Assembly (NCBI RefSeq): GCF_947568905.1
Contig: NC_079167.1
Span: 1,240,001-1,304,000 of the forward strand
DNA: 64,000 nt
Origin: Ostrea edulis
Taxonomy: Eukaryota
Reading direction: 5' to 3'
Shown here: one piece after another, positions 22,385 to 51,673 of the stretch
Numbering within the stretch: position 1 is the stretch's first letter
Layout of the letters: the number at the start of each line of letters is the position of its first letter
Made by a program: the position numbers and the translations under genes
The notes under the pieces: model-generated
Seen by the model: the letters and a program-made list of their open reading frames with translations, nothing else
What the model was told of the DNA's origin: nothing
Database searches by the model: none

Positions 22385-23958
22385 TCTTTCTGGAAAGAAA
22401 ATCACCTCTCTTCTATATGCGGATGATCTTGTACTGCTTTCAGAAAACCAAAATGGACTACAAAACAAACTAAACTTACTTGAAAAATATTGCAACGATT
22501 GGTGCTTAGAAATTAATACCAATAAGACAAAAGTAGTCATTTTTAATAAAAGCGGACACCTAATTAAAGAAAATTTTATGTTCGGTAACATATGTATTGA
22601 ATGTACTAACAAATATAAATATCTAGGAGTAATATTATCCTTCAAGGAAGCAAAATCTGATCTATACAATAAAGCTCTTAAGGCCTCATTCAAACTTTAT
22701 AAAGACATCAAATCTATCGATCCACCAATTAAAACATTTTTGCATCTTTTTGACCATATGGTAAAACCCATCGCCTTGTATGGCTGCGAGATATGGGGAA
22801 CACTTTCAACATGCATGCTGGAAAAAGACAGAGATTTATATGATATCTTTAAAAATTGGGAGGTAGAAAACCTGAATATTAAGTTTTGTAAACATCTACT
22901 GGGTGCCGGTAAAAGAAGTACTAATATTGCAATAATCTCTGAATTGGGTAGATATCCTATGTTCTGCTCTATAATCCAAAGTATTTTACTATATTGGCAT
23001 AGACTCAAGAATTGCCCAGAACCATCCCTGTTATACAGTGCTTATACAGAGAATATCAATCTGAATTCATATAATATAAATTGTTGGTACAAAAACGTTA
23101 ATCATTTTAAGGAAAAAATGGGCATTTTGGTACCCAATTGTAAAAATCTCAAATTCTCATTTTTCAAAAAACAATTGAAGAATCAGGTACGGAAACAATT
23201 TTTACTTTACTGATCAAAACGACGTGAAGAGGGTCAGAAATCAGGAAAACTCACAACATATTTTTTGTATAAAGAAAACTTTACTATGGAAAGTTATATA
23301 TTTTTAGAATCCCTAGAATTAAGAAAAACTATATTAGTCTATATGTAGATTTCGAATTAGTACACATGACCTTCGAATTGAAAGAGGAAGATATGAATTT
23401 ACAAAATCCAATTCTGGCCAGAAGATTTCTTTAGAAAGAAACAAAAGAATATGTGAATTATGTAACCTTAATTGTGTTGAAGATGAATTTCATTTCCTTA
23501 CTGATTGTCCATTCTATGTTGAAGAGAGAAATATGTTTTTTAATGGTATCTACAAGCTCAACAAAAATTTTATCTATCGAACAAATAAGAACAAATTTAC
23601 TTGGTTAATGATTAATGAAGACAAACCAGTAATTGTCAAATTGAGTGAATATTTAGTGCAAACTTTCAGAAAAAGAAGTGATGCTTTAAAACTGCAAAAA
23701 TCATTATAGTTTATTATTCATATATTGGTACAATACTGATACTGTCCATCTACTTGTATATATACATGATTAGCAATTCATATATGTATGTACTTGTGTC
23801 CCCAACATGCTGCATCCACATGCAGTTTGCAGTCTCTGTAACCTGTAGTTAATGTTGTAAACTTTCTTTCTTTTTTGAATTTCCTTCTTTATAAACTGTC
23901 TTACTGTTATGCCCTCTGGGTCCAAAATTGGAATAAACTTATCTTATCTTATCTTATC
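22385..23958 (+). mobile_element. RTE-X-like LINE copy C, 5'-truncated within RT, (TTATC)n tail, putative 7-bp TSD TATACAA
   Basis: LLYADDLVLLSE...KPIALYGCEIWG...ELGRYPM...CELC...DEFHFLTDC. TATACAA at 22378-22384 and 23959-23965. Has frameshifts and stops. Confidence 0.88.
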
Positions 23959-35245: not shown

Positions 35246-37038
35246 CGTAGGTCGCGGGTTTACAGACCTTTTTTTTTTTCTCACTCGAAAAACTATAAAC
35301 TTTGAAGAGGCGGGGTGGGGGGTTACCAATAACTGGAGTCAAATTCGTCCAAAGATCAGAGCTTTGTAAGAGAGAGATAATCCTTAATTTTGAGATAAAT
35401 TTCTACATTTTATCATAACAATTGAATTTAAATTATGTCCATTCTTTCAAGCTAGTAACGAAGTAAATAGCTACTGGACTGTTGAAACCCTCGAGGACTA
35501 ATGTTAACACTAACAGTCCACCATCTCGATCAAGGACTTATAATACGGTTCCAATTTTTATTCACCAGATGCGCTTTTCAACAAATAATGTCTCTTTCAG
35601 TGATCTGTTTCCATGAAAAGATTATCTCAAAAGAAATATATTTATCATTAACTGTAATCTAAAGAAAATAAATAAATACCATGCACAATGCAATTCAGTA
35701 TAAAAGTAAACTCTAATCAAATGTACGAAAATAACAGGTGCCGAAACGTCCTATACACATTGATGGATATAAATGGGGGTCCAGTAAAACGATATATCAG
35801 AGAAATATATTTTAAAAAGAAATGAAATGGTCAAAATTCAGAAATATTTTGATTTTTCTAATTTGAACCCAGCCCGATCGGAATTATAAAAAAGAAAAAG
35901 TCACAGAGAACATTGTAATCAGAAAACTGCATTCCGTTGATGTAAAATGGCTTACAAATTAAACGACTTTATAAGGGTAACTAATTTCTTGATGAACAGT
36001 GCATACAATTAGCAACAATATGAGTATCTTAGTAATTTCTATCAATTTTGATCGGGATCGGTACTTTTTTCTCCACTTTGAAAATAGTGATCATATCTAA
36101 AATTTGGACATTTCGTTCCAATTTCCTTTTATACTATATTTCTTCGATATATCTCTTTTCTAACTGACATGTGTTTTGAAGATTCTATCCGTAGATATAA
36201 AAAATATTAACAAATGACGTTTTCAATTTTCATAAATATCTTTTTCTAAAAAAAAATTAGAACGTTCATATCTGAATCCTTTAGGCATATTTTATTAGAT
36301 ATTTATATCATGCACCGAATCACAGGGTTAACGCTATTTGGTACCGCTTGCAGGGCGGCGACCACGAGTTACCTGCCCCTATACAATGAGTTAATTGCCC
36401 CTGTATTTCATCTGTTAAGTTGTACTTAAAATAGGCTAACTCTTGCGCAAAAAAAGATAGAAAATATCAAATATGGGAAAGCGGGACGATAGACCAAACA
36501 TATCTACGAAGAGACCGTTGGTGCCGGAAATATCTCTGTCTTTAGTAGTGTCCGCGAGGTATATTAATTTATAAAACATGAGATATTAGTACCATATTGC
36601 CCGGGAATCAAAAGATTTTTGCAAGATTGGTAAGTATATTCTATATAGGCTAAACAAGCACAAGGCAAGGGCACGTGGCCTGGGAAGTCATTCCGCAGCG
36701 CAGGAATGACCAAAACTAGCCTACTACGGTACCATTTACAGAAATTACCAAAAAAATGACAAAAATTACCGAGAGAGGAGCTAAAATGATCTCAGTAATA
36801 CATGACATCTACTATCATATTCACATTAAAAATGTTGGTCCCTCCTTTGACGACTTCAATAATTTTTAATTTCGGTCATATCTTTGGTATTTTCTGTGAA
36901 CGTTTGTAATTTCGGACATTATATGTAACAATCCTACTATTCATTCCACAATGAAGGCCAGTGGGCCTAGATTTTTAATTTGATACACGTATAAACTTAA
37001 CACTGCGCAAGTTATGTCACGGAATGCAGTATAGGGGA

Positions 37039-37309
37039 GGAGAAAATATTTGGCTGGACCAGGAGTCAAACCTAGGATCCCTGCATTACTAGTCAGGTGC
37101 TCTAACCACTGAGCTATCCAGGTCGATATCCACGGTCCGTGTAGCCCTAACTACTAAATTCCTCCCTTTAATTTGTCTTTGCCGTCGAAGACACACAACC
37201 CAAGATTCATTTCACCCCTGGCAGGACAAGAGTAGTCACGGCACCAACTGGTAAAATCTTGCACAGAGGTCCCTGGGTTCAATTCCCGATCCAGCCACAA
37301 ATTTTCTCC
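37039..37309. mobile_element. ~270-bp element whose inverted ends are tRNA-derived (tRNA-Thr(AGT)-like)
   Basis: TIR GGAGAAAAT(A/T)T(T/G)TGGCTGGA. Minus strand 37051-37124 folds as a degenerate tRNA with A box TAGCTCAGTGG and anticodon loop CTAGTAA. Plus strand 37261-37297 has a T-arm GGGTTCAATTCCC and acceptor half. Confidence 0.6.
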
Positions 37310-39012
37310 GTGTATGTCTATCTGAGACTGAGTTGGAAAATTACAGTATCTTCATAGTGACAAACTAATGAAAATATTGATCAAATTCGACTGGTCAAGG
37401 ACTGTTAATATAAATAAATTTGAAACATTGGTCATTGTAATGATTGGTTTCATGTTATACTAAGTTTGTGTTTCAAGACAAGGCTGTCTTTGTTGGTGAT
37501 GATACTGATGTATATATTTAGAAACAAGTAATGCTTTGATTTTGATTACAGGTGTGGTCTTTAAAAAAATTAATGCATGGCAAGGTTGATAGTGAGACTA
37601 ATAAATTCTTTCAGCAGAATTCAGCTAGACACACAAAAAAAGACAATCACTACAGCCTTCCAAGAAGATGGACTGCCTCACAATAGTTTCCTTGAGGACT
37701 GTCTTGAAATATCCAGAGTTTAAGGTATGCATTTTGTACACCATGAAAATCAGCTTATAGTTTAGCTATTATCTAATTAGAGGGAATTTTCAATAGGGAC
37801 TGGGTCTTTTCATTTACTGGACTCTTATGTAAAAATGACACTGTTCTTCCACCCCTGTTAGATCCACTATAACTTTAAGGAAAATAATTGGATCATCCTG
37901 TCCCACCAATATGCACATCTACAAATGAGAATGAAGCATTGCACAAAGTTTCAAGACTATCCGATAAGCCATATAGGAGAAGTGTTCACAAGATTTTGTG
38001 ACAGACAGAAAGACGGATGAAGTACAAAAACTATGTCTCCCCCTGGAAGAGGGGAGACATAATTAGAATTTTTTTTAGACAGAAAGGAATGAGATCTCTG
38101 ACACAGATTTTGCTATGAATATATATCATGTTTTGCTGAGTGAAAACATTTTTTTCTTCTCTTTTATTTATGCGTATCTAAGCACAAGGTAATTAATACT
38201 TTTCATACTTTCCCAATTTGAACATTTTATGTGTCAATTTTCCCAATTCTACGGACTCTGGACCCAGTTTGAAAATGGTAGGAAAACCCCTGCAAAGACT
38301 CAAATATGAAATCATTTTCAATTAGAGGTTAAAACATTTAGTGATGAATTAATTACTGGAATTTATGAGGACTACTGAGACATGTTAAAATGGTGTCATA
38401 TTTGTCTTCAGATTCAAGAAACGGACTCTATCTGGAAAAGGAAAACAATATCAAAGCTCCTCTGAGAGAAGTTGGCCAAGGAAAGCATTTAGAAGAAAGT
38501 GGAGATTCATTGTTTTTACCAGATCCAGCAGATCACAGAAAGCATCTAGTAGGGGAGGTAAATGAAGCATCTTTTACTCCCTATATACAGTGCTTGAAGC
38601 TAACTTTTTATGTCACCAGTCCAGCCGGACTGATGGGGTATAATTTCAACCAGTCCGCTGAAAAATTTACTAGTCCAACAGAGTTTTCCAGAAATATTTA
38701 AACACATTTCATTAATGTTATTAAAATGAAATTTAGCTCAATATGTCTTAAACAATATTGTAACACTTAAATGTGGGATTTATATTTACAACTCGGATTT
38801 GTCTGATAGGTCTACAGATCGAAGCATGCCAAACGTGTAAAGAACAAGGTACGATTGTATACATAAAAAGGCCCAAAAATTTTCTCTCAATAAAATGTGT
38901 TTGGAATTAACCTTAATAAGCGTTTTAAGAAAGTAAAATATATGCCAGGTATACTATGTCAACAAAACCAGAATGATATTTCTAATTGGACAGCATTATG
39001 ACATTTCCTGCC

Positions 39013-39039
39013 TTTTTATGCCCCCGAGATTGAAGATCA

Positions 39040-39075
<36 letters not shown>

Positions 39076-39090
39076 AATTCTGTCATTCTG

Positions 39091-39127
<37 letters not shown>

Positions 39128-39279
39128 AAGTGATAGAGCTTAGTTATTTCACATGAGTATTCCTTGTGACAAGACCTTTCCGTGGGTACCAACATTTTTT
39201 ACCATGTGACCTTGACCTTGGAGTATGACCTACTTTTTGAAAACTTTAACCTTGCTAATAACGTTTGAACAATAAGTGA

Positions 39280-39315
<36 letters not shown>

Positions 39316-39519
39316 CAAGACCTTTCCGTTGGTATTAAACCTTTTGACCTTGACATTTAACTTACTTTTAATTTTTTTTTTACATTGGTCATAACTTCTA
39401 AATGGTAAATATTAGAGCTTTCGTATTATACATGATGATTTCTTTTGACAAGATCTTTCTACTGGTACCAAGATATTTGCCCTTGTGACCTTGACCATCT
39501 TTGGAATTGGCCATTATCT

Positions 39520-39551
<32 letters not shown>
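39013..39551 (+). mobile_element. Helentron-type non-autonomous element (HINE-like)
   Basis: TTTTTATGCCCCC...GGGGGCATA 5' hairpin, (TCTG)-type microsatellite, internal repeats, 3' TGTGTTTCACAAACACA palindrome then CTTGTT, T-rich site. Confidence 0.7.
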
Positions 39552-39554
<3 letters not shown>

Positions 39555-40597
39555 AAATAAGCCTGAAAACTGTCAAATGTCATACAGATTATTGCTCAGG
39601 AAAAGATGTGCGCATTTGTCGAGCAAAATAAAAATGATATATATTGTGTATTAATTTAAGATGAAAAACATACTTGAATATGAATTTGCTCGACGCATGC
39701 ACTGTATGTTTTCTGATAAGAAAACCACCTGAATTTGTGGATATTTTCATTGAAAATGGCATTTTTGCAATTTTATGCCAACTTCTAGCTCACGTCATAT
39801 GACACAAATCATTTTGCTGATCAAACTGAGCAGATTTTGGGTTTGCTAATCCATTCCTTATTTGAATGCCAGGGTTTGAGCTCCAAGTGAAATCATCGAT
39901 ATTTTGGGCCAAATTACTTTAGAAACTGTACCTACTTCTTTCATAAGTATATTTTGCAAAATGATGCTTTAGAAAATTAACTCATCTGACTGACTAAAAC
40001 AAATGTCAGTCAGTCAGCCAGACTTTTAACCAGTCACGGAGTGACAGGCATACATTAATTTTGAGCCCTGTATATATTGCCAGACAAGTAGTCCAATCAG
40101 ATTATAAACTTTAACTGAAAAATTTACAAGCCCATTCATAAATTAGAGACCGGTGGCAGTGCAGTGTTTCTCACCAATGCTACAATCCCTAAAATTATGC
40201 TATGTCAGTAATTCCCAAATGTCACAGGCATCAAACTTTCAATATATACATAAATGAAAATTGTAAAACTTAAATTCTGTTGGCAAAGCTCAGCAAGAGA
40301 GGCATACATTTTGTTTCAAATCCCCTTATATAATTACATGTATTCATTTAGAATGTTTTCTTAGTTTCCAGGATTAAGCCAGCCAGTAGATGAGACTATT
40401 ATATCAAAAATACATTTACTTGTACACGAGGGCACACAAAGCGTTGATGAAACAAAAAGACATTTCCGTCTGTTTGTAAAGGATACTATTTCACCAGGGA
40501 ACACCATCTCAGAATTTAACAGATGCTTTTACCCCGCCAATAAGGATGTAAGAAATCACATTTACAGGGCACCGAGATTTTGCCAGTAAGTTCTAAA

Positions 40598-41601
40598 TTT
40601 TTAGGTCACCTGAATTCATTCAGGTGACCTATTGCTATCTGTTTTTGTCCGTCGTCGTTCGTCGTGCTTTAACATTTCAACATTTTCAGCTTCTTCTCTG
40701 AAACCCCTGAACCAATTTCAACCAATTTTGGCATATAGCATCTGTGGGTGGAGGGGAACAAAAATTGTGAAATTCGTGGTCCCTGCCCCCTGGGACCTGA
40801 GGGGTGGGGCAAAAACCATCAAAATGAGTGTAATTTTAAAAAATCTTCGTCTTTACTCCTGAACATCAAGAAGCCAAACTGTGGGCATAATTATAATGAG
40901 CGTTGAGCCCTCTACCAAAAATGTGAAATTCATGGCCCCTGGGGCAGGGCTTCTTGTCATAGGGTGGGGCTCTATTGGTCATATAGTGAAAGTGTAGAAA
41001 TTCTTTGAAAATCTTCTTCTCTGTCTCTGGGTATTAAGTAGACAAACTAATAGCATGGTAATGATGAGCAAGGATGCCTCTTTGTACCCCATGCAACAAG
41101 TTGTGGGGGGGTATACTGGAATCGGGTTGTCCGTCCGTCCGTCTATAGACGCAATGGTTTCCGGGCTCTAAAGCATTATCCTTTCCACCTACCGTCACCA
41201 TATCATATATATGGACTACCCATGGGATGAAGATGTTCCCTATCGATTTTGGGGTCAAAAGGTCAAAGGTCAAGCGCACTGGACATTGAAGTAGCAATAT
41301 GGTTTCCGGGCTTTAAAGCGTTATCCTTTCCACCTACAGTCACCATATCATACATATGGACTACCCATGGGATGAAGATGTTCCCTATCGATTTTGGGGT
41401 CAAAAGGTCAAAGGTCATGCGCACTGGACATCGAAGTAGCAACACTCAGAAAAGAGGTAGTTTATACCTATTACCAACACCCTTTGGGAGATTGAGGTAA
41501 GCGGGGGATATTCTTAGTGAGCATTGCTCACAGTACCTCTTGTTAAAAATTGTGAAATTCATGGCCCCTAGATCAGGGGTTCTGTTGCTAGGGTGGGGCT
41601 C

Positions 41602-41649
<48 letters not shown>

Positions 41650-42066
41650 GTGTCCTTGGGTATTAAGTAGACAAACCAATAGCATGGTTATGATGAGCAA
41701 GGATGCCTCTTTCAAAATTGTGAAATTCATGGCCCCTGGGTCAGGGTTTCTGGTATTAGGGTGGGGCCCTATTGATCATATAGTGAAAATGCATTTTATT
41801 TCTTTGAAAATCTTCTCCTCTGCTGCTGGGTATTAAGTAGACAAACTAATAGTATGATAATGATGATCAAGGATGCTTCTTTCAAAACTGAAATTTATGG
41901 TCCCTGGGTAAGGGGTTCTGGTGCAAAGGCGGGGCTGACCACATAGCTATTCAATGTTTCTTCCATCCAAAAGTAAAATTCTTATATTTAAACACAAACC
42001 TAATTCAAACATTGGAAGGTTGTTACATGATACTCAGGTGACCTATAAGGCCCCTGGGCCTCTTGT
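40598..42066 (+). mobile_element. HINE-like element with a second HINE nested at 41082-41544
   Basis: TTTTAGGTCACCTGA start, GTCC/GTC microsatellite, tandem monomers, CAGGTGACC...GGCCCCTGGGCCTCTTGTT end. The nested copy has ~156-bp repeats and sits at a TT site. Confidence 0.75.
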
Positions 42067-42127
42067 TTTTTTCTCAGGCTCAAATGTGCTTTTCTGATCA
42101 AAATTTGTTAGTTGTCTGTCGTCGGCA

Positions 42128-42184
<57 letters not shown>

Positions 42185-42312
42185 ACTTGGCACAAAGGGG
42201 AGATAATCACAAAATTAGGGTGGGGTCATTTAAAAATCTTCTCAAGAAGCACTGGGCCAGAGGACCTGAAATTATCATTAAAGATTCCTGACCTAGTGCA
42301 GATTCAAGTTTG

Positions 42313-42352
<40 letters not shown>

Positions 42353-42425
42353 AATTTTTTGTCCGTCGTCTGTCTGTCTGTCCGTCTGTCTGTCCGTTTG
42401 TCTGTTAAACTTTTCACATTTTCGA

Positions 42426-42463
<38 letters not shown>

Positions 42464-43049
42464 ATGGCCAAAAGCATCCTTGGGTGAAGGGCTTTCAAGT
42501 TTGTTCAAATGAAGGGCCATGTCCCTTTCAAAGGGGAGATAATCATAAAAATGAAAAAATAGGGTGGGGTCATTTAAAAATCTTCTTCTCAAGAACCACT
42601 GGGCCAGAAGAGCTGAAATTTACCTGGAAGCTTCCTGACGTAGTGCAGATTCAAGTTTGTTCAAATCATGGCCCCTGGGGAGTAGGATGGGGCCACAAGT
42701 GGGGGGGGGGGGGGTCAAAGTTTTACATACAAATATAGGAGAAAGCTTTAAAAATCTTCTTCTCAAGAACCATTGGGCCAAAGAAATTGACATTTACATG
42801 AAAGCTTTCTGACATAGTGTAGATTCAAGTATGCAAAGGGTAGTTTGGGCCATAATAGGGACTAAGGTTTTACATGGAAATATATATGGAAAGTCTTCAG
42901 ATATGGGCCAAAGTGACTCAGGTGAGCGATGTGGCCCATGGGCCTGTTGTTACAAATCATGGCCCCTGGGGGTAGGATGGGGTCACAATAGAGACCAAAG
43001 TTTTACATGCGAATATATAGGGAAAATCTTTAGAACTGGACCAGGGTGA

Positions 43050-43081
<32 letters not shown>

Positions 43082-43085
43082 TGTT
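42067..43085 (+). mobile_element. HINE-like element with Cg170-like satellite monomers; related copy nested at 42311-42951
   Basis: AGCTCACCTGAGC start, (GTCT/GTCC)n, and two CAGGTGAGCGATGTGGCCCATGGGCC ends. Confidence 0.75.
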
Positions 43086-44460
43086 AACCTATATCTTTTA
43101 TTTGTGTGAAGATATTCAAACATTAAGAACAGACATATATATATATAAATCTTTTTTTCTTTCATTTTTTCATCCAGGGTAGTTTAGAACTGTGTGCATT
43201 GGTTTTGGAAGAATTTGGACTGTTTAGGCTAAAATCCATTATGTAAGTTCATCTTTGTGGTGCACAAATTCCATATGATCATTTCAAATATTCAACATTG
43301 CTTCTATTTTCAATTTGAAATTCTACATGTATTTTGTTTGAGAGATGAAAACAATCCTCGAAACATTATCACCGTTATCTTTAATTTTCCATCATACTTG
43401 TGTCAAAGAGTTGAACTTTCTTTACCAGTAATTTTATATTGACTTCGCATTGTGTGATATATAAAGTTTTTATGATTTTATTTTCTGTCTAAGATATTCA
43501 ATATTTAAAGGAAAAAGATAATGGTAGGAGATGGTAGGATAAATTCTAATTATTCAGAGAAACTTGATAAATACTGTGTTTGAACTTATATACTCGATAA
43601 CACAATAGAAGAATGCAATTTACTAGTTAAACTTTGATAGGATACTAAATTTAGGATGAGCCAATAAGATTATGTCTTGTTTTTCATGTTACAGGATTGG
43701 ACAGAATATGAACACACACATCCAATACTTCAAAGATATTATGTTTGTGGAGGCAGAGATTTTGATTGCATCCACTGTTTAGAATACATCCTTAAGGGAA
43801 GCAGACTGCCGCCTTTACCCAATGATATAATGATTAATCATAACTATATCTGTTTTGTACCAAATAGAAAGACCATTGATTCAGGTCATTTTCAAATCCA
43901 CTGGCATACATTGTACTATACATGCAACCTTTTCAAACTTTACATTTAAGATTTTGTAAAGGAAATATCTTAATGTTTCACATGTTTACCTTTCACTGTG
44001 CTATGTAATTCATTATACCTGCCATTATTCCAGTCTTCCTGAACATAATTTGTTTTCTGCAATTTCATTGGCCAAGAGGCTTAATCCTGGGTTATCAGAT
44101 TGAGCATTTATATTTAGTATCCCATTGATTTTGTCAGCCCTATATAAGGAGCTGACTCAGATTTACTCACTCTGCTAGGTTAAAGAACTCTAAGGTTTGT
44201 ACTTTTCACATGAATTTCGTGTTCGCCTCTTATCTTTTACATAGAGTAGGAAATGAACATAACATTGAGTTAGGGAACAATTTAGATTTTACATTATAAT
44301 ATGTAAATACCTTAGCAGAGTCAATTTACTTGGTTCAGGGTAGTATCAGATATTACTTTTTCAGAGTTTAAGTGTTTAGGCTATCTCAATGTTTCTATAG
44401 TTAGCCTTGTCCTATGTTACTTTTAGATGTATGGAAGCCTTTTAGTGTTATAACACTATA

Positions 44461-45033
44461 TTTATGCTCCCATTCAAAGAAGAGGGGCATATTGGTTTGC
44501 ACCTGTTGGTCGGTCGGTAGACCACATGTTGTCCGCTTAATATCTTAAGAACCATTCACTTGATCGTAACATATTTCATATGTGGGTTGGTTATGAAAAG
44601 AAGAGGACCCCAATTGTTTTTCGGGTCGAAATGTCAAGGGTCAATCTACTCTGGACATAGGAAGACACTGCCTGCTCAATATCTTGAGAACCCTTTGCTT
44701 GACAGACATCAAACTTGGTACACTGGTACATCTCAAGGAGTAGATTTGAGGTCACATGGTCAGAAGTCAAGGGGTAAACTGGACATAGTAATATATTGTC
44801 TCTTATGTTTTAAGAATTATTTGCTTGATTGACACCAAACCTGGTACAGCATAAGGAGTAGATGACCCCTATTGATTTTTAGGTCACTTGGTCAATCCAC
44901 TCCTGACATAGGAAGATATTGTTTGCTCAATATTTCGAATTGATGATACTACTATCAATCAAATTATGCATGTGTATAACCCTTTTCAATTTTGCACCAT
45001 GGGGGCTTATATGTTTTACAAACACCTCATGTT
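44461..45033 (+). mobile_element. HINE-like element (same family as 52739-53905)
   Basis: TTTATGCTCCC...GGGGCATA, GGTC microsatellite, ~140-bp repeats, TGTTTTACAAACA end. Confidence 0.7.
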
Positions 45034-45745
45034 TTATAGTTTGTGAAAGCTTGTTAGGGTCATAACTTTAGATTTTCTTATTATGGTACTTGCCCGTCAG
45101 AGACTGGACATATTATGGTATGTTGTTGTCTGTCCGGACCTTGTAAGATGGGATACAGACTGAACCGTAAGCTCCAGAATCTTACAACTTGGTACATTTG
45201 ATCACCATAAAAGGAAGATGCTTATTGTTTTTTAAGGTCAAGGTTGTAGGTTCACTTAATAGGAAAACCTTGTTTGAGAAAATTACAGATTCTTGAACTG
45301 AGTATTTTGAGGAAACATTACATAGAAAGTACATGATTTGTCAAATTTCTCCCAATATTCAACTGAGAACCTTATTCTGCAGAGTATTTGTATGGGTATG
45401 GAAAATGTGTATGTGGTTATGATTTTGATTTTTGTTTAATTTTTTTGTTGTTGAAAATTACAGGTTTAACCGAGTCAGTTTTTGAGGAAATATACATGTA
45501 TTAAATAAATGACGGCTTGACCTTTTAACTCATCTCACAGTTTTGAAGCTAGGGTCTTTGTAAATAACTTCTTTGGTGTTTTAGAATATTTACAGATTGT
45601 TGATCATGGTCAATTTTGGGGAAATATTTTCCGCAGAGCTCTAGTTGTCTATCTACCGGCCTCCTGTCACTTTTAAGTTTAGGAGCTTTTATTCATGGAA
45701 AGAAAGTATGTGACAGCCTGATGATGGCTGATACTATTTAAAGCC

Positions 45746-46319
45746 TTTTTATACGCCCGTCTTAAGACGTTCCATATTATGGTATGGCGTTCATGTCCGT
45801 CCGTCTGTTAGCTTTTTCGTGTCCGACCCGTAACTTAAATACTACAAGGCCTAGAATCATCACACTTTGTCTGTAGATACATCTTGGGTAGAAGGTGTGT
45901 CGCACATTAAAACCAGGTCACTGTGACTTTTCATTAAGAAGATATCCGTCTGTTAGCTTTTTCGTGTCCGACCCGTAACTTAAATACTACAAGGCCTAGA
46001 ATCATCAAACTTTGTCTGTAGATACATCTTGGGTAGAAGGTGTGTTGCACATTAAAACCAGGTCACTGTGACTTTTCATTAAGAAGATATGGCCATATAT
46101 GGCAAAAACTTGTCCGGCTCATAACTTGAAAACTATTAGACCTAGAATCACCAAAATTGGTCAACTAATGCATCTTAGGTAGAAGGTGTGTCGCATCCTA
46201 CTTTAAGGTCACTGTGACTTTTAATTAAGGTGATATAAAAAAAATGTTTTAATGGGTACAATCTATACTGTTAACAATATGTGACGGGCGTATCATGTGC
46301 CGTGACGTTGCACTTTATT
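45746..46319 (+). mobile_element. HINE-like element
   Basis: TTTTTATACGCCCGTC start with matching GACGGGCGTAT sub-terminal inverted repeat, GTCC microsatellite, ~147-bp repeats. Confidence 0.7.
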
Positions 46320-46687
46320 CTAGAAATGGCATCAGAAAAACACCCTATGTAACCTTTTCTGCTTGTACTCATTTATTTTTATTGGAAAACTTATTACTTG
46401 TTATCAGCTACTCTAAAACAATATTGACTTGTGCTATAATAAATTTGTAAACTTTACAAGTCTTTTCATTTCAAACAAGGTGTTGAACAAGTTGTTGAAC
46501 ATCATCTGGGATTCACAACCAAACAGGTACAACATGGAAACAGTGTGTTCCATGATTTCTGTAGTGTAACAAGTCCAGCTGATCCCAAGTACACTGTACT
46601 ATTGACAACGATTGTTTTTGATAAGCACAATAGAAGTTCTACTTTGGGAGAAGCTATAATTATTTTAGTCCTAGCATACACTGCTTC

Positions 46688-49451
46688 CTGTTAGAGTTAG
46701 GGTGCTGTATAACTTGGTACCTCTTTGAGATAAAATGCTTTATCATCAAATCATAAAGCATCTTCCCTCTAACAGATACCAGATTATAAAGCACCCTCCC
46801 TCTAACAGGTACCAACTTATAACGCACTCTCCCTCTAACAGGTACCAGATTATAAAGTACACTACCTCTAACAGGTACCAACTTATAAAGCACCCTCCCT
46901 CTAACAGGTACCAACTTATAAAGCAGCCTCCCTCTAACAGGTACCAGATTCTATAAAGTACCCTCCCTCTAACAGGTACCAACTTACAAAGCACACTTCC
47001 TCCAACATGTACCAGATTATAAAATATCCTCCATTTATAATCTGGTACCTGTTAGAGGGAGGTTGCCTTATAATCTGGTACCTGCTAGAGGGAGAGTGCT
47101 TTATTAGTTGGTACCTGTTAGAGAGAGAGTGCTTTATAATCTGGTACCTGTTAGAGGGAGAGTGCTTTATAAGTTGGTACCTGTTACAGGGAGGTTGCCT
47201 TATAAGTTGGTACCTGTTAGAGGGAGAGTGCTTTATAATCTGGTACCTGTTAGAGGGAGAGTGCTTTATAATCTGGTACCTGTTAGATGGAGAGTGCTTT
47301 ATAAGTTGGTACCTGTTAGAGGGAGAGTGTCTTATAAGTTGGTACCTGTTAGAGGGAGAGTGCTTTATTAGTTGGTACCTGTTAGAGGAAGGTTGCCTTA
47401 TAAGTTGGTATCTGTTAGAGGAAGAGTGCTTTATTAGTTGGTACCTGTTAGAGGGAGAGTGCTTTATAATCTGGTACCTGTTAGAGGGAGGTTGCCTTAT
47501 AAGTTGGTACCTGTTAGAGGGAGAGTGCTTTATTAGTTGGTACCTGTTAGAGGGAGGGTTTCCTTATAAGTTGGTACCTGTTAGAGGGAGAGTGCTTTAT
47601 TATTTGGTACCTGTTAGAGGGAGAGTGCTTTATAATCTGGTACCTGTTAGAGGGAGAGTGCTTTATAAGTTGGTACCTGTTAGAGGGAGGTTGCTTTATT
47701 AGTTGGTACCTGTTAGAGGAAGAGTGTCTTATAAGTTGGTACCTGTTAGAGGGAGGTTGCCTTATAAGTTGGTACCTGTTAGAGGGAGAGTGTCTTATAA
47801 GTTGGTACCTGTTAGAGGGAGAGTGCTTTATAAGTTGGTACCTGTTAGAGGAAGGTTGCCTTATAAGTTGGTACCTGTTAGAGGGAGAGTGCTTTATAAT
47901 CTGGTACCTGTTAGAGGGAGAGTGCTTTATAATCTGGTACCTGTTAGAGGGAGAGTGCTTTATAAGTTGGTACCTGTTACAGGGAGGTTGCCTTATAAGT
48001 TGGTACCTGTTAGAGGGAGAGTGTCTTATAAGTTGGTACCTGTTAGAGGGAGAGTGCTTTATAATCTGGTACCTGTTAGAGGGAGAGTGCTTTATAAGTT
48101 GGTACCTGTTACAGGGAGGTTGCCTTATAAGTTGGTACCTGTTAGAGGGAGAGTGTCTTATAAGTTGGTACCTGTTAGAGGGAGAGTGCTTTATAATCTG
48201 GTACCTGTTAGAGGGAGAGTGCTTTATTAGTTGGTACCTGTTAGAGGGAGAGTGCTTTATAATCTGGTACCTGTTAGAGGGAGGTTGCCTTATAAGTTGG
48301 TACCTGTTAGAGGGAGAGTGCTTTATTAGTTGGTACCTGTTAGAGGGAGAGTGCTTTATAATCTGGTACCTGTTAGAGGGAGAGTGCTTTATAAGTTGGT
48401 ATCTGTTAGAGGGAGAGTGTCTTATAAGTTGGTACCTGTTAGAGGGAGAGTGCTTTATTAGTTGGTACCTGTTAGAGGAAGGTTGCCTTATAAGTTGGTA
48501 CCTGTTAGAGGGAGAGTGCTTTATTAGTTGGTACCTGTTAGAGGGAGAGTGCTTTATAATCTGGTACCTGTTAGAGGGAGAGTGCCTTATAAGTTGGTAC
48601 CTGTTAGAGGGAGAGTGCTTTATTAGTTGGTACCTGTTAGAGGGAGGTTGCCTTCTAAGTTGGTACCTGTTAGAGGGAGAGTGCTTTATTAGTTGGTACC
48701 TGTTAGAGGGAGAGTGCTTTATTAGTTGGTACCTGTTAGAGGGAGGTTGCCTTATAAGTTGGTACCTGTTAGAGGGAGAGTGCTTTATTAGTTGGTACCT
48801 GTTAGAGGGAGGTTGCCTTATAAGTTGGTACCTGTTAGAGGGAGAGTGCTTTATTATTTGGTACCTGTTAGAGGGAGAGTGCTTTATAATCTGGTACCTG
48901 TTAGAGGGAGAGTGCTTTATAATCTGGTACCTGTTAGAGGGAGAGTGCTTTATAAGTTGGTACCTGTTAGAGGGAGAGTGTCTTATAAGTTGGTACCTGT
49001 TAGAGGGAGAGTGCTTTATTAGTTGGTACCTGTTAGAGGGAGAGTGCTTTATAATCTGGTACCTGTTAGAGGGAGAGTGCCTTATAAGTTGGTACCTGTT
49101 AGAGGGAGAGTGCTTTATTAGTTGGTACCTGTTAGAGGGAGGTTGCCTTCTAAGTTGGTACCTGTTAGAGGGAGAGTGCTTTATTAGTTGGTACCTGTTA
49201 CAGGGAGGTTGCCTTATAAGTTGGTACCTGTTAGAGGGAGAGTGCTTTATAAGTTGGTAGCTGTTACAGGGAGAGTGTTTATTAGTTGGTACGTGTTAGA
49301 GGGAGAGTGCTTTATAATCTGGTACCTGTTAGAGGGAGAGTGTTTATTAGTTGGTACCTGTTAGAGGGAGAGTGCTTTATAATCTGGTACCAGTTAGAGA
49401 GTGCTTTATAATCTGGTACCTGTTAGAGGGAAGGTGCTTTAAGTTGGTACC
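46688..49451. repeat. 33-bp minisatellite (~80 units) with an internal inverted block at ~46750-47020
   Basis: Unit (GT/TC)TGGTACCTGTTAGAGGGAGAGTGCTTTATAA with recurring variants. The orientation switches twice. Confidence 0.95.
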
Positions 49452-49760
49452 CATAGTATGTTACAACATAGACCATAGCATATCTTGCGCATCTGACAAA
49501 TTAAACGTTATAAACTACTATCATCAGTTAACTGAAAATTAGAAAGTTCAATACATTGATAAAATAGAAGTTCTGTACAGTTTTAGTTTCAATTAAAATA
49601 ACTAGTGCGATTAAATAACACTACTGTTATTATAGACAATGAAGTACAGAAGACATCAGGAATTAATTGAAAAGTGGGGTATATAATATGTATCGGTACT
49701 GCATGTCTGAAAGTGCGCAAGATTTAAAAACAAAATCGATTGCTTTTAGATAGTCAATAT

Positions 49761-49848
49761 CATAGGCGTAGCTTGGGTTATAATATTACCGAGGCAGGGG
49801 GTCTGGGGGGCTGTGCCCCCCAGAAGCTATCGACATTTTACCAACGTA

Positions 49849-49880
<32 letters not shown>

Positions 49881-49925
49881 ACCGAGGCAGCTGCCTCGGT
49901 TGCCTCAATGGAAGCTACGCCACTG
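49761..49925. mobile_element. MITE with CA(T/G)(A/T)GGCGTAGCTT TIR and 5-bp TSD AATAT
   Basis: TSD at 49756-49760 and 49926-49930. Shares the GGGGGTCTGGGGG and GAGGCAGCTGCCTC motifs with 6210-6531. Confidence 0.8.
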
Positions 49926-51673
49926 AATATTGACATTTATGGTCATAAACTGGTGATTATACAATGTTTGTGACTTCCATCTCTTACTTCTGGGAAAGTT
50001 GGAAAAACGTCATTATATTTTGCTGCTATTTTCTTGTGTATAAAGATCTACGTGACGCAGATTCTTGTGCATAGAAAATCGTCTTACTTAATGAGGACTT
50101 GTTCTTAAACCTCGGGTTGTCTTTTACAAAAAATATCATTTTACATGTATTCATTTCATTTACGAAATGACACTACCCCGTTCTTAATGACAGTTATGAT
50201 GTTCTAATAAATATTTCACAATTTCCTACAAATTTGAAATAATCACCATTGCATTTCTGAAATCAAAGTCGCCGCCCTGAATTTTTACCGCCCATATGAT
50301 ATGTAGAGGCTAGACAATCAAGACAACTGCATTTGTCCAAATTCCGTGGTCTTTGTTTGAAGAACAGGGATATCAGTTTTCAAACAACAAATATGTAAAA
50401 GTCTTGATATCCTCTATGGAAAATAACATTTCAAGTTGATTTAAAGTGTACACATTGTTAATTGTAATTAAGCGTATTTCATATCAATGTGCTGTCACAA
50501 CATTCCGTGAAATTATGAATACTACGACGTTCTAATGGTGTATCAAGATTTTAAAATATTCTGCCCGAAATTTGTACATCAATGATTTAGAAATATCAGT
50601 CTAATACTTTGGGGAGGGTGTGATGCTAATACATCCATTATAACACACGGTACCTAATATGCATTAAAAAAATTATATGTTTATGCATAGAATTACCATT
50701 TTTCTCAATTCACTGCAACAGTGTATCATTCTTGTTAACAATGTAGATTATTAATATTTGTCAGGGTTTTTTGATACTTGCTTATGTAATATATGTCTCT
50801 TGATTTAGACGCGGGTTGTGTCGAAAATCTGAGTTTTAAATAATCAACAGTGTTGTGCTTCTCATTTTTAGAACCGAGTGATTTGAATATGATTGAAAGT
50901 ATTCATGTTTCCTACGTAATTGATAATAAATATACATGTGTTTGCCAACCACAATGGAGCTCCAACAGGACCTATTTTACCTAATATTGGTCTATCAAGA
51001 AATAAGTATAAAAGAATTGACACACGACGATTATTCGTACGAATCATTGTGAATTATAAATTGGCACGAGGGATAACTCGTACCTACATAAGATGAGATA
51101 ACTCGTGGTCGTCACCCTGTAAGCGGTACCAGATAGCCTCGACCGAATCACAGCGAAACTTGGACTCAAGAATCTTTTATTTGCAAACAAAACACGCTTT
51201 TTATCATTCCAGGAAAATCACAAAAAAAATTCATATAAAATAATTGAGAGCTTGTATCATTCTTTCGATGGTGAAATCATACTTCATAAGAAGTGTTTTA
51301 ATGAGCAATTAAATAAAATTTTAGTGTAATAAGCTACCTTAACAAATTGGAAAATCTTTATGAAATGCAGATTATAAATTGTTGGAACGGTGGCTCTTGG
51401 TGAGATTACAATAGTAGTATTACTGCTTTATCACATGAATATAAATTGTAGTTGTAATTAAAAGATTTACATAACGCCCTATCAAATCAGTTCTCTAAAG
51501 CGCTTTACAAATGTGAGAGAAAAGATAATATAAAATCGATGTGATACATATGAACAAAATATTCAGTGTCAGAATTAAAATGCATAATTTTTTTGAATTT
51601 CTCTCTTCTTCTTTTTTTTTTTTTTTTATTTTGTAAAAAAAATGTAACAGCACTGTAAGAGCTGTAATGTAAG

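What the first reader, a model, noticed from the sequence alone, without database searches (positions are those of the whole stretch)
36317..51153. 14.8-kb Mutator-like element carrying a spliced CARF/ALS2CR8-like gene
Seen: ~57-bp imperfect TIRs beginning GGT and a perfect 9-bp TSD bracket 14,819 bp. Starting ~150 bp inside the left TIR, four exon-like segments in correct order encode CARF-like motifs; the last is a fully open 71-codon exon and earlier ones have stops and frameshifts. Established: 9-bp TSDs with G-initial TIRs typify Mutator/MULE, and CARF is a vertebrate calcium-responsive transcription factor defined by the ALS2CR8 domain. The motif match is from memory. Inference: this is physical evidence that ALS2CR8-domain genes travel as part of a transposon, either as the DNA-binding module of its transposase or as cargo, which bears on a transposon origin of CARF. 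No DDE core was recognised. Further candidate exons at ~43694-43885, ~46481-46600 and ~50330-50460 are unassigned.
Basis: partly seen in the sequence, partly recalled or inferred. Interest (0 to 1): 0.8.

Follow-up and report, generated by a model that had tools for sequence, protein, structure and literature searches.

The report
Defective oyster Mutator transposon, CARF-type domain
This is a real, recently copied 14.8-kb "jumping gene" of the flat oyster that has lost its own enzyme. It keeps the broken front end of a Mutator transposase gene, and that front end is the same DNA-binding domain found in the vertebrate neuronal factor CARF, which points to a transposon origin for that domain.

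Summary
Window 36326-51144 is a 14,819-bp element with about 57-bp imperfect inverted ends (45/57 identical) and a perfect 9-bp target duplication, GAATCACAG.

- **Copy number.** It belongs to a young family of roughly 70 copies in its genome (Ostrea edulis). Each copy has its own 9-bp duplication.
- **Empty sites.** Three paralogous sites carry a single copy of the 9-mer.
- **Gene remnant.** The exon at 40365-40586 passes Pfam's ALS2CR8 threshold. Three upstream exon remnants, with stops and frameshifts, are homologous and collinear with open exons of a relative. One ALS2CR8 exon and all catalytic exons are missing.
- **Complete relative.** This is a 32-kb element on another chromosome. Its ends are about 96% identical and it has its own 9-bp duplication. 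It encodes an apparently complete ALS2CR8-MULE-SWIM transposase in at least 11 open exons.
- **Wider pattern.** ALS2CR8 is followed by a MULE domain at 16 or more loci genome-wide, and in proteins of other molluscs and a crustacean.

So the ALS2CR8 segments are a decayed remnant of the element's own transposase, not cargo. The window copy is non-autonomous and was probably moved in trans.

The element is a new member of a known kind. The suggested transposase origin of CARF's domain is plausible but its direction is unproven. The scan reached the same conclusion earlier on another family in this genome (s1-311812).

The parts
36317..36325 (.). Left copy of the 9-bp target-site duplication GAATCACAG
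   Evidence: Read directly. Identical to 51145-51153. Paralogous empty sites carry one copy.
36326..36382 (+). Left terminal inverted repeat (about 57 bp, begins GGTTAACGC)
   Evidence: 45/57 identical to the right end read inwards. 96% identical over 100 bp to the left end of the complete relative. A contig from another sample starts matching exactly at 36326 (record 24).
36463..36634 (+). Remnant of transposase exon 1 (start of the DNA-binding region), with stops and gaps; ends at a GTAAGT donor
   Evidence: tblastn to the relative's open exon L064:614-811: 60% then 100% identity, with stops inside.
36965..37310 (-). Nested tRNA-derived SINE-like insertion, where the relative has the exon for ALS2CR8 positions 4-50
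   Evidence: tRNA-like structure at 37051-37123. Very high read depth typical of a separate repeat. The relative's exon L064:1750-1962 has no counterpart in the window.
37561..37775 (+). tblastn match holding the remnant of the exon for ALS2CR8 positions about 58-89, read in two frames with a frameshift in a poly-A run; the homologous exon itself ends at a GT donor near 37717 and the match runs on into intron
   Evidence: tblastn in two frames to L064:2902-3147. The poly-A length varies between copies, so some copies are in frame.
38394..38560 (+). Remnant of the exon for ALS2CR8 positions about 90-143 (holds the HxxH motif); two stops and a frameshift
   Evidence: tblastn to L064:3304-3483. 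The relative's exon hits ALS2CR8 90-143.
38621..39094 (.). Extra segment present in the window copy and absent from the two other full copies compared
   Evidence: BLAST against a 9.1-kb and a 10.7-kb copy. Very high depth, so it is a common repeat.
40365..40586 (+). Open 74-codon exon encoding the C-terminal, helix-turn-helix-like part of ALS2CR8; GTAAGT donor at 40586-40591
   Evidence: Pfam PF15299, E 7e-8, 33 bits, profile 167-230. Present and open in about 50 copies. 80% amino-acid identity to the relative's exon, dN/dS 0.16.
40603..46700 (.). Repeat-rich interior without transposase homology, including 145-bp and 168-bp tandem repeats
   Evidence: Tandem repeats at 41154-41442, 41546-41922 and 45800-46236. 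40726-42062 is absent from the 10.7-kb copy, the rest is shared. No protein homology.
46747..49451 (.). 33-bp minisatellite: 8 units in one orientation, then 73.5 units in the other. The unit resembles the TIR core.
   Evidence: 76-81% match of the unit to TIR positions 10-30 (family D18). Array length differs between copies.
49452..50370 (.). Segment specific to the window's subfamily, absent from the 10.7-kb copy
51020..51144 (-). Right terminal 125 bp shared with the complete relative; the right TIR is 51088-51144
   Evidence: 96% identity to the relative's right end. TIR alignment.
51145..51153 (.). Right copy of the 9-bp target-site duplication GAATCACAG
   Evidence: Read directly.

Best explanation
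Window 36326-51144 is a non-autonomous member of a young, roughly 70-copy Mutator-like (MULE) DNA transposon family in the flat oyster, Ostrea edulis. It inserted into an older repeat and duplicated 9 bp of the target.

Its left part keeps the decayed first exons of the family's own transposase gene. The N-terminal DNA-binding region of that transposase is the ALS2CR8 (CARF-type) domain. From predicted structure, this domain looks like a WRKY-GCM1-like zinc module followed by a helix-turn-helix-like module.

One ALS2CR8 exon and all catalytic (MULE/DDE) and SWIM exons have been lost. In their place are unrelated repeats and a 2.7-kb 33-bp satellite. The copy therefore cannot move itself.

Shown: the ends, the duplication, the family, the exon homology, the absence of a catalytic domain, and the existence of a 32-kb relative (G000:C5:59856979-59888989). 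That relative has nearly identical ends, its own 9-bp duplication, and open ALS2CR8, MULE and SWIM exons.

Inferred: the relative's transposase binds the shared ends through its ALS2CR8 region and moved the defective copies in trans, by cut-and-paste.
For: - Ends and duplication.
- Family size and youth: 40 or more left ends and 40 or more right ends at 99-100% identity. 144 TIR-core hits against 0 in the control. Copies of the window's subtype differ by 2-7 substitutions per 1.8 kb at the left end and 4-15 at the right end.
- Different perfect 9-bp duplications in 9 of 11 pairs.
- Paralogous empty sites.
- ALS2CR8 Pfam hit on 40365-40586.
- Collinear homology of the three upstream remnants to open exons of the relative.
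- Relative's exons hit ALS2CR8 4-50, 58-89, 90-143 and 166-231, then ZSWIM1-3 RNaseH-like/MULE (54 and 41 bits) and SWIM (30.6 bits). They align without stops to a rock-oyster MULE protein over residues 1-588, apart from a short unaligned gap at residues 75-90.
- The relative's right end was predicted from its left flank and found exactly once in 895 Mb, with the duplication ACAAGCTTT.
- The first 100 bp of the left end are 96% identical between the window and the relative, and the last 125 bp are 96% identical.
- No MULE or SWIM homology in the window copy or in two other copies.
- ALS2CR8 followed by MULE at 16 or more other loci.
- Same order in 6 of 10 long public relatives.
- Fold: the AFT2 DNA-binding domain is the best match (Z 6.9, rmsd 2.6, 73 residues), and WRKY1, WRKY33 and WRKY4 are also listed. 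The C-terminal part matches three-helix DNA-binding domains, including those of transposases (Z 5-6).
Against: - No RNA support. Two runs guessed to be RNA had no depth on the exon stretches.
- The relative is not the direct parent. Its interior is only 77-84% identical to the window copy, and exon D shows dS about 0.64. A closer complete parent was not found in this assembly; the next MULE exon is at most 58% identical.
- Trans-mobilisation is untested.
- The second locus holding the relative's MULE exon (on C4) did not show the expected ends.
- The fold matches are of middling strength.
Confidence: 0.85

Rival explanations
1. Cargo. The ALS2CR8 segments are a host CARF-like gene fragment picked up by a Mutator element, as in plant Pack-MULEs, and have nothing to do with the transposase.
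For: The window copy has no catalytic domain, and its exon remnants are broken. That is how captured fragments look.
Against: In the complete relative the same exons sit at the same distance from the same end. They lie collinear with, and on the same strand as, the downstream MULE and SWIM exons. ALS2CR8 followed by MULE recurs at 16 or more loci of several families here. It also occurs within single proteins of other phyla. The fold is the type known for MULE DNA-binding domains (PMC1702500).
Confidence: 0.04
2. The remnant is not junk. Family copies express a short ALS2CR8-only protein (exons 3-5, like the 169-aa RefSeq model) that binds the element's ends and acts as a regulator or repressor of transposition.
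For: Exon D is open in every copy scored. RefSeq predicts 139-170-aa proteins from three copies. In some copies the poly-A run restores the frame of the preceding exon.
Against: No depth on these exons in the two putative RNA runs. The exon with the first zinc-ligand cysteine is missing. The copies are too young for open frames to mean selection. The dN/dS of 0.16 reflects constraint before the copy became defective.
Confidence: 0.1
3. The element belongs to another superfamily with 8-9-bp duplications and GG-initial ends (for example Merlin), and the similarity to the MULE-encoding element is limited to captured ends.
For: 9-bp duplications and GG ends also occur in Merlin (own knowledge). 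The window copy itself has no transposase to classify it.
Against: Homology to the MULE-encoding relative covers the first about 640 bp and four exon regions in order, not only the ends. No other transposase domain was found in the stretches scanned.
Confidence: 0.01

Closest known systems
Mutator-like elements (MULEs) with a WRKY-GCM1-type DNA-binding domain and SWIM finger, and their non-autonomous derivatives
   Same: 9-bp target duplication. Terminal inverted repeats of tens of bases. Transposase laid out as N-terminal zinc DNA-binding domain, then MULE RNase-H-like catalytic domain, then SWIM finger. A few complete copies and many defective ones. Babu et al. 2006 (PMC1702500) describe animal MULE transposases whose WRKY-GCM1 domain has two residues between the conserved histidines, as here (HRKH).
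   Different: The DNA-binding region here is the Pfam ALS2CR8 family, which the papers I could search do not connect with MULEs. The gene has at least 11 exons. The complete relative is very large (32 kb). The defective copies are 9-16 kb and carry a long 33-bp satellite.
Vertebrate CARF (calcium-responsive transcription factor, ALS2CR8)
   Same: Shares the ALS2CR8 domain by Pfam definition. Full-length mollusc transposases hit PF15299 at up to 129 bits.
   Different: CARF is a single-copy host transcription factor (own knowledge). I did not examine whether it keeps any MULE or SWIM remnant, or its position in a tree, because human sequence was not to be used.
FHY3/FAR1 of plants and Aft1/Aft2/Rbf1 of fungi (transcription factors derived from MULE transposases)
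   Same: These are precedents for a MULE DNA-binding domain becoming a host transcription factor (PMC1702500, PMC8599713). The best structural match of the ALS2CR8 N-terminal module is the AFT2 DNA-binding domain.
   Different: No detectable sequence similarity was tested here. The structural match is moderate (Z 6.9).
Pack-MULEs
   Same: Non-autonomous Mutator elements carrying gene fragments between Mutator ends.
   Different: Here the fragments are the element's own transposase exons, not captured host genes.

Membership tests
Mutator/MULE superfamily (the element family) | Target-site duplication of 8-11 bp, typically 9 | tested here: met
   Perfect 9 bp in the window copy, in 8 other pairs and in the complete relative. 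Single copy at paralogous empty sites.
Mutator/MULE superfamily (the element family) | Terminal inverted repeats | tested here: met
   45/57 identity, with a conserved core. 144 genome hits in inverted pairs, 0 in the control.
Mutator/MULE superfamily (the element family) | Transposase with the MULE (DDE, RNase-H-like) catalytic domain | tested here: met
   Met in the relative with about 96% identical ends: PF21056 at 54 bits and PF10551 at 41 bits. The DATYNT, MTDFDE and NGLERQ motifs are in open exons.
Autonomous MULE (the window copy itself) | Encodes its own catalytic domain | tested here: not met
   No MULE or SWIM hit in the window copy, nor in two other full copies of the family.
Mutator/MULE superfamily (the element family) | SWIM zinc finger after the catalytic domain (common, not universal) | tested here: met
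   PF04434 at 30.6 bits on L065:2-616 of the relative.
Pfam ALS2CR8 (PF15299) | Score over the curated cut-off of 28.9 bits | tested here: met
   Window exon 40365-40586: 33 bits, but only profile positions 167-230. Relative's exons: 36.9, 28.1, 21.0 and 40.4 bits, covering 4-231.
Pfam ALS2CR8 (PF15299) | Complete domain in the window copy | tested here: not met
   The exon for positions 4-50 is absent. The exons for 58-143 carry stops and frameshifts.
WRKY-GCM1 fold (N-terminal half of ALS2CR8) | Four-stranded sheet with C...C...H-x-H zinc ligands, similar to solved WRKY, GCM or AFT domains | tested here: inconclusive
   Conserved C75, C112, H169 and H172 in the alignment. AFT2 ranks first (Z 6.9); WRKY1 5.2, WRKY33 4.6, WRKY4 3.9. 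Foldseek found nothing. All Z values are under 8.
Active transposon family | Insertion polymorphism or excision between individuals | not tested
Near-identity of copies is indirect.

The most novel reading that the evidence does not exclude
The 'orphan' DNA-binding domain of the vertebrate neuronal transcription factor CARF is a domesticated DNA-binding region of a Mutator-like transposase: a WRKY-GCM1-like zinc module plus a helix-turn-helix-like module. Oysters still hold a complete, possibly active 32-kb element of that lineage with about 70 freshly copied defective derivatives. CARF would then join FHY3/FAR1 and Aft1/2 as a MULE-derived transcription factor. Its DNA motif might trace back to a transposon end.
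Probability: 0.55. Interest if true: 0.65.

Novelty: new member of a known kind. Interest (0 to 1): 0.5.

Why it matters
There are three reasons.

- **Annotation.** RefSeq lists several copies of this family as 'uncharacterized protein' genes. They are transposon remnants.
- **Oyster biology.** A DNA transposon family with copies differing by about 0.1-0.8%, plus an apparently complete 32-kb source element, is a candidate for ongoing transposition. That matters for structural variation in a species under restoration and breeding.
- **Origin of CARF's domain.** The window, its relative and the genome-wide ALS2CR8-then-MULE pattern show that ALS2CR8 serves as the N-terminal domain of Mutator transposases. 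This makes a transposase origin of CARF's DNA-binding domain directly testable. I found no paper that states this link, though it can be seen in public domain annotations, and the scan has already met it on another family in this genome.

Tried and rejected
- **Merlin, hAT or P superfamily.** Considered because of the 9-bp duplication and GG ends. Dropped once the MULE-encoding relative was found.
The pieces at 43668-43946 and 46443-46691, and five other open pieces, gave only chance-level Pfam rows. None matched MULE relatives.
- **RNA evidence.** No run on record as RNA holds the stretch. The two guessed RNA runs cover only the nested common repeats, and no splice-like joints lie on the exons. 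This does not show silence.
- **Sequence search of solved structures** with the ALS2CR8 profile found nothing meaningful. Foldseek against the PDB found nothing.
- **Second locus with the relative's MULE exon (C4).** The ends predicted from the C5 copy's geometry were not there, and its left-end signature is unique to C5. That copy's structure stays unresolved.
- **Large genome fetch.** I worked with two full copies, 60 end fragments and the relative.
- **Joined spliced protein.** Every exon was searched by reference on its own. A whole-protein check of the relative's transposase was therefore left out.
- **Human sequence.** None was met or used. CARF itself was not fetched.
- **Literature.** Five searches found no paper linking ALS2CR8 or CARF to transposases. 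Subscription journals are not covered.


Full report
**1.

The left end begins at 36326 (GGTTAACGCTATTTGGTACC...). The right end, read inwards from 51144, begins GGTCGAGGCTATCTGGTACC.... The two match at 45 of the first 57 positions, with a well-kept core at positions 8-46. GAATCACAG lies directly outside both ends, so the element is 14,819 bp.

**2. It is a family, and a young one.**

- The first and last 300 bp each find 40 or more places in the window's own 895-Mb assembly at 99-100% identity. Most are paired 9-16 kb apart in the right orientation.
- A 33-base TIR-core pattern occurs 74 + 70 times and its reversed control 0 times, which indicates about 70 elements.
- Of 11 pairs whose flanks I could compare, the window's included, 9 have perfect 9-bp duplications, all different. 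One has a single mismatch.
- Copies of the window's own subtype differ by only 2-7 substitutions per 1.8 kb at the left end and 4-15 at the right end.
- A contig from another sample starts matching exactly at 36326, with unrelated sequence before it.
- The element landed in an older, abundant repeat. Three paralogues of that repeat run through the insertion point with a single RAATCACAG.
- The organism is Ostrea edulis.

**3. The ALS2CR8 signal.**

The open 74-codon piece at 40365-40586 passes Pfam's threshold for ALS2CR8 (33 bits, profile 167-230). It is present and open in about 50 copies. It ends at a GTAAGT donor, so the apparent stop codon is probably intronic. The three upstream segments do not reach Pfam by themselves.

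**4. The key relative.**

A genome-wide scan showed that ALS2CR8 hits outside this family are followed by a MULE hit 0.2-1.6 kb downstream on the same strand. This holds at 13 loci by Pfam, and at further loci by protein search. I fetched one such locus on C5.

- *Ends.* Its left end is 96% identical over 100 bp to the window's, and its first about 640 bp align. From its left flank I predicted a duplication, ACAAGCTTT. The pattern 'right TIR + ACAAGCTTT' occurs exactly once in the genome, 32,011 bp downstream. Its last 125 bp are 96% identical to the window's right end.
- *Exons.* Starting about 130 bp inside the left end, it has open exons hitting ALS2CR8 at 4-50, 58-89, 90-143 and 166-231. 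These are followed by ZSWIM1-3 RNaseH-like/MULE and SWIM exons.
- *Integrity.* All exons align without stops to residues 1-588 of a Saccostrea MULE protein, apart from a short unaligned gap at residues 75-90. The aligned parts include the DATYNT, MTDFDE, CDFHREQAW and NGLERQ motifs.
- *Copy number.* Its catalytic exon exists at 100% identity at only two loci. The next best is 58% identical.

**5. What the window copy keeps.**

tblastn of the relative's exons onto the window finds four remnants:

| Relative's exon | Window coordinates | State |
|---|---|---|
| Exon 1 | 36463-36634 | stops, gaps |
| ALS2CR8 58-89 | 37561-37775 | frameshift in a poly-A run |
| ALS2CR8 90-143 | 38394-38560 | two stops and a frameshift |
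| ALS2CR8 166-231 | 40365-40586 | open, 80% identical |

- The match for the second exon runs past the exon's GT donor near 37717 into intron.
- The poly-A run in that exon varies in length between copies.
- The exon for ALS2CR8 4-50 is gone. A tRNA-derived SINE-like insert sits there instead.
- No MULE or SWIM homology exists in the window copy or in two other full copies.
- The rest of the interior is nested repeats, tandem repeats and a 33-bp satellite of about 82 units. Array length and several blocks differ between copies, which explains the 9-16-kb size range.

**6. Relationship between the two.**

The interior is only 77-84% identical. Exon D shows dN/dS 0.16, with 20 synonymous against 17 non-synonymous differences. 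The window family therefore descends from a once-coding cousin of the C5 element, not from that element itself. No closer complete parent is in this assembly. The ends are far better conserved than the interior, as expected if both answer to the same transposase. That step is inference.

**7. How the domain may work.**

- An alignment of 16-18 relatives keeps C75, C112, H169 and H172 (HxxH).
- The predicted N-terminal module (pLDDT 81) has the AFT2 DNA-binding domain as its best match of 48,161 chains (Z 6.9, rmsd 2.6 Å, 73 residues). WRKY1, WRKY33 and WRKY4 also appear in the list.
- The C-terminal module, which is the part the window's open exon encodes, matches three-helix DNA-binding domains, including those of TnsB, IstA, Tc3 and Mos1 transposases (Z 5-6).
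- These scores are moderate, and Foldseek found nothing. [quoted passage not shown]

**8. Wider distribution and novelty.**

Of ten long public relatives, six carry both ALS2CR8 and MULE, and four of those also carry SWIM. A seventh carries MULE and SWIM, but starts inside the ALS2CR8 region and gave no ALS2CR8 hit. They come from Pecten, Mytilus, Lottia, Saccostrea and a mantis shrimp. Others have ALS2CR8 alone.

I found no paper linking ALS2CR8 or CARF with transposases. An earlier follow-up in this scan reached the same reading on a different, defective family at about 44.7 Mb of the same chromosome. My scans also hit that locus.

The element is a new member of a known kind. The CARF-origin idea is plausible, but its direction is not shown here.

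**9. Limits.**

- There is no RNA evidence.
- There is no allelic empty site.
- The C4 copy is unresolved.
- Vertebrate CARF was not examined.

Noticed in passing
window 46747-49451: The 33-bp satellite unit (TTGGTACCTGTTAGAGGG...) matches the TIR core (TTGGTACCGCTTGCAGGG) at 76-81% over 21 bases. The array starts with 8 units in the opposite orientation. It could be a block of extra transposase-binding sites or a chance likeness (rough odds of a few in a hundred). It was not seen in the 23 kb of the complete relative that I fetched.
   Followed up: partly
L066:1046-1345 and L066:2538-3008 (G000:C5:59883000-59889100, inside the right part of the 32-kb relative): A second coding region on the same strand as the transposase: a SWIM finger (20.7 bits) followed by a YqaJ-like exonuclease domain (36 bits). 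It may be a passenger gene, a second element gene or a nested element.
   Followed up: partly
L065:3683-3760 (relative, about 13.6 kb from its left end): A short open stretch 65% identical to the C-terminal part of the scallop ALS2CR8-MULE protein P0091 (residues 898-923). This suggests the transposase gene may extend to further exons. I did not test which domain it is.
   Followed up: no
G000:C7, about 4.15-5.61 Mb: At least eight spaced repeats of an ALS2CR8 exon pair (profile 65-93 and 169-234, 98-aa open frame) with no MULE hit listed nearby. This may be a segmentally duplicated ALS2CR8-only gene or element.
   Followed up: no
window 36026-36325 and 51154-51480: The element's insertion site lies in an abundant older repeat (1,452 first-look candidates, 86-90% identity).
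   Followed up: partly
window 23773-23943 (- strand): A 57-aa open stretch 93% identical to one inside an intron of the 32-kb relative (L064:9140-9310). It is probably another interspersed repeat.
   Followed up: no
G000:C4:1394090-1402163: About 100 kb from the window lies another copy whose left end abuts a second left TIR core 51 bp away. Its flanks show no matching duplication. It may be a nested or rearranged pair.
   Followed up: no
RefSeq proteins XP_056009100.1, XP_056009099.1, XP_055998153.1: Three copies of this defective family are annotated as 139-170-aa 'uncharacterized protein' genes built from the exon remnants.
   Followed up: partly
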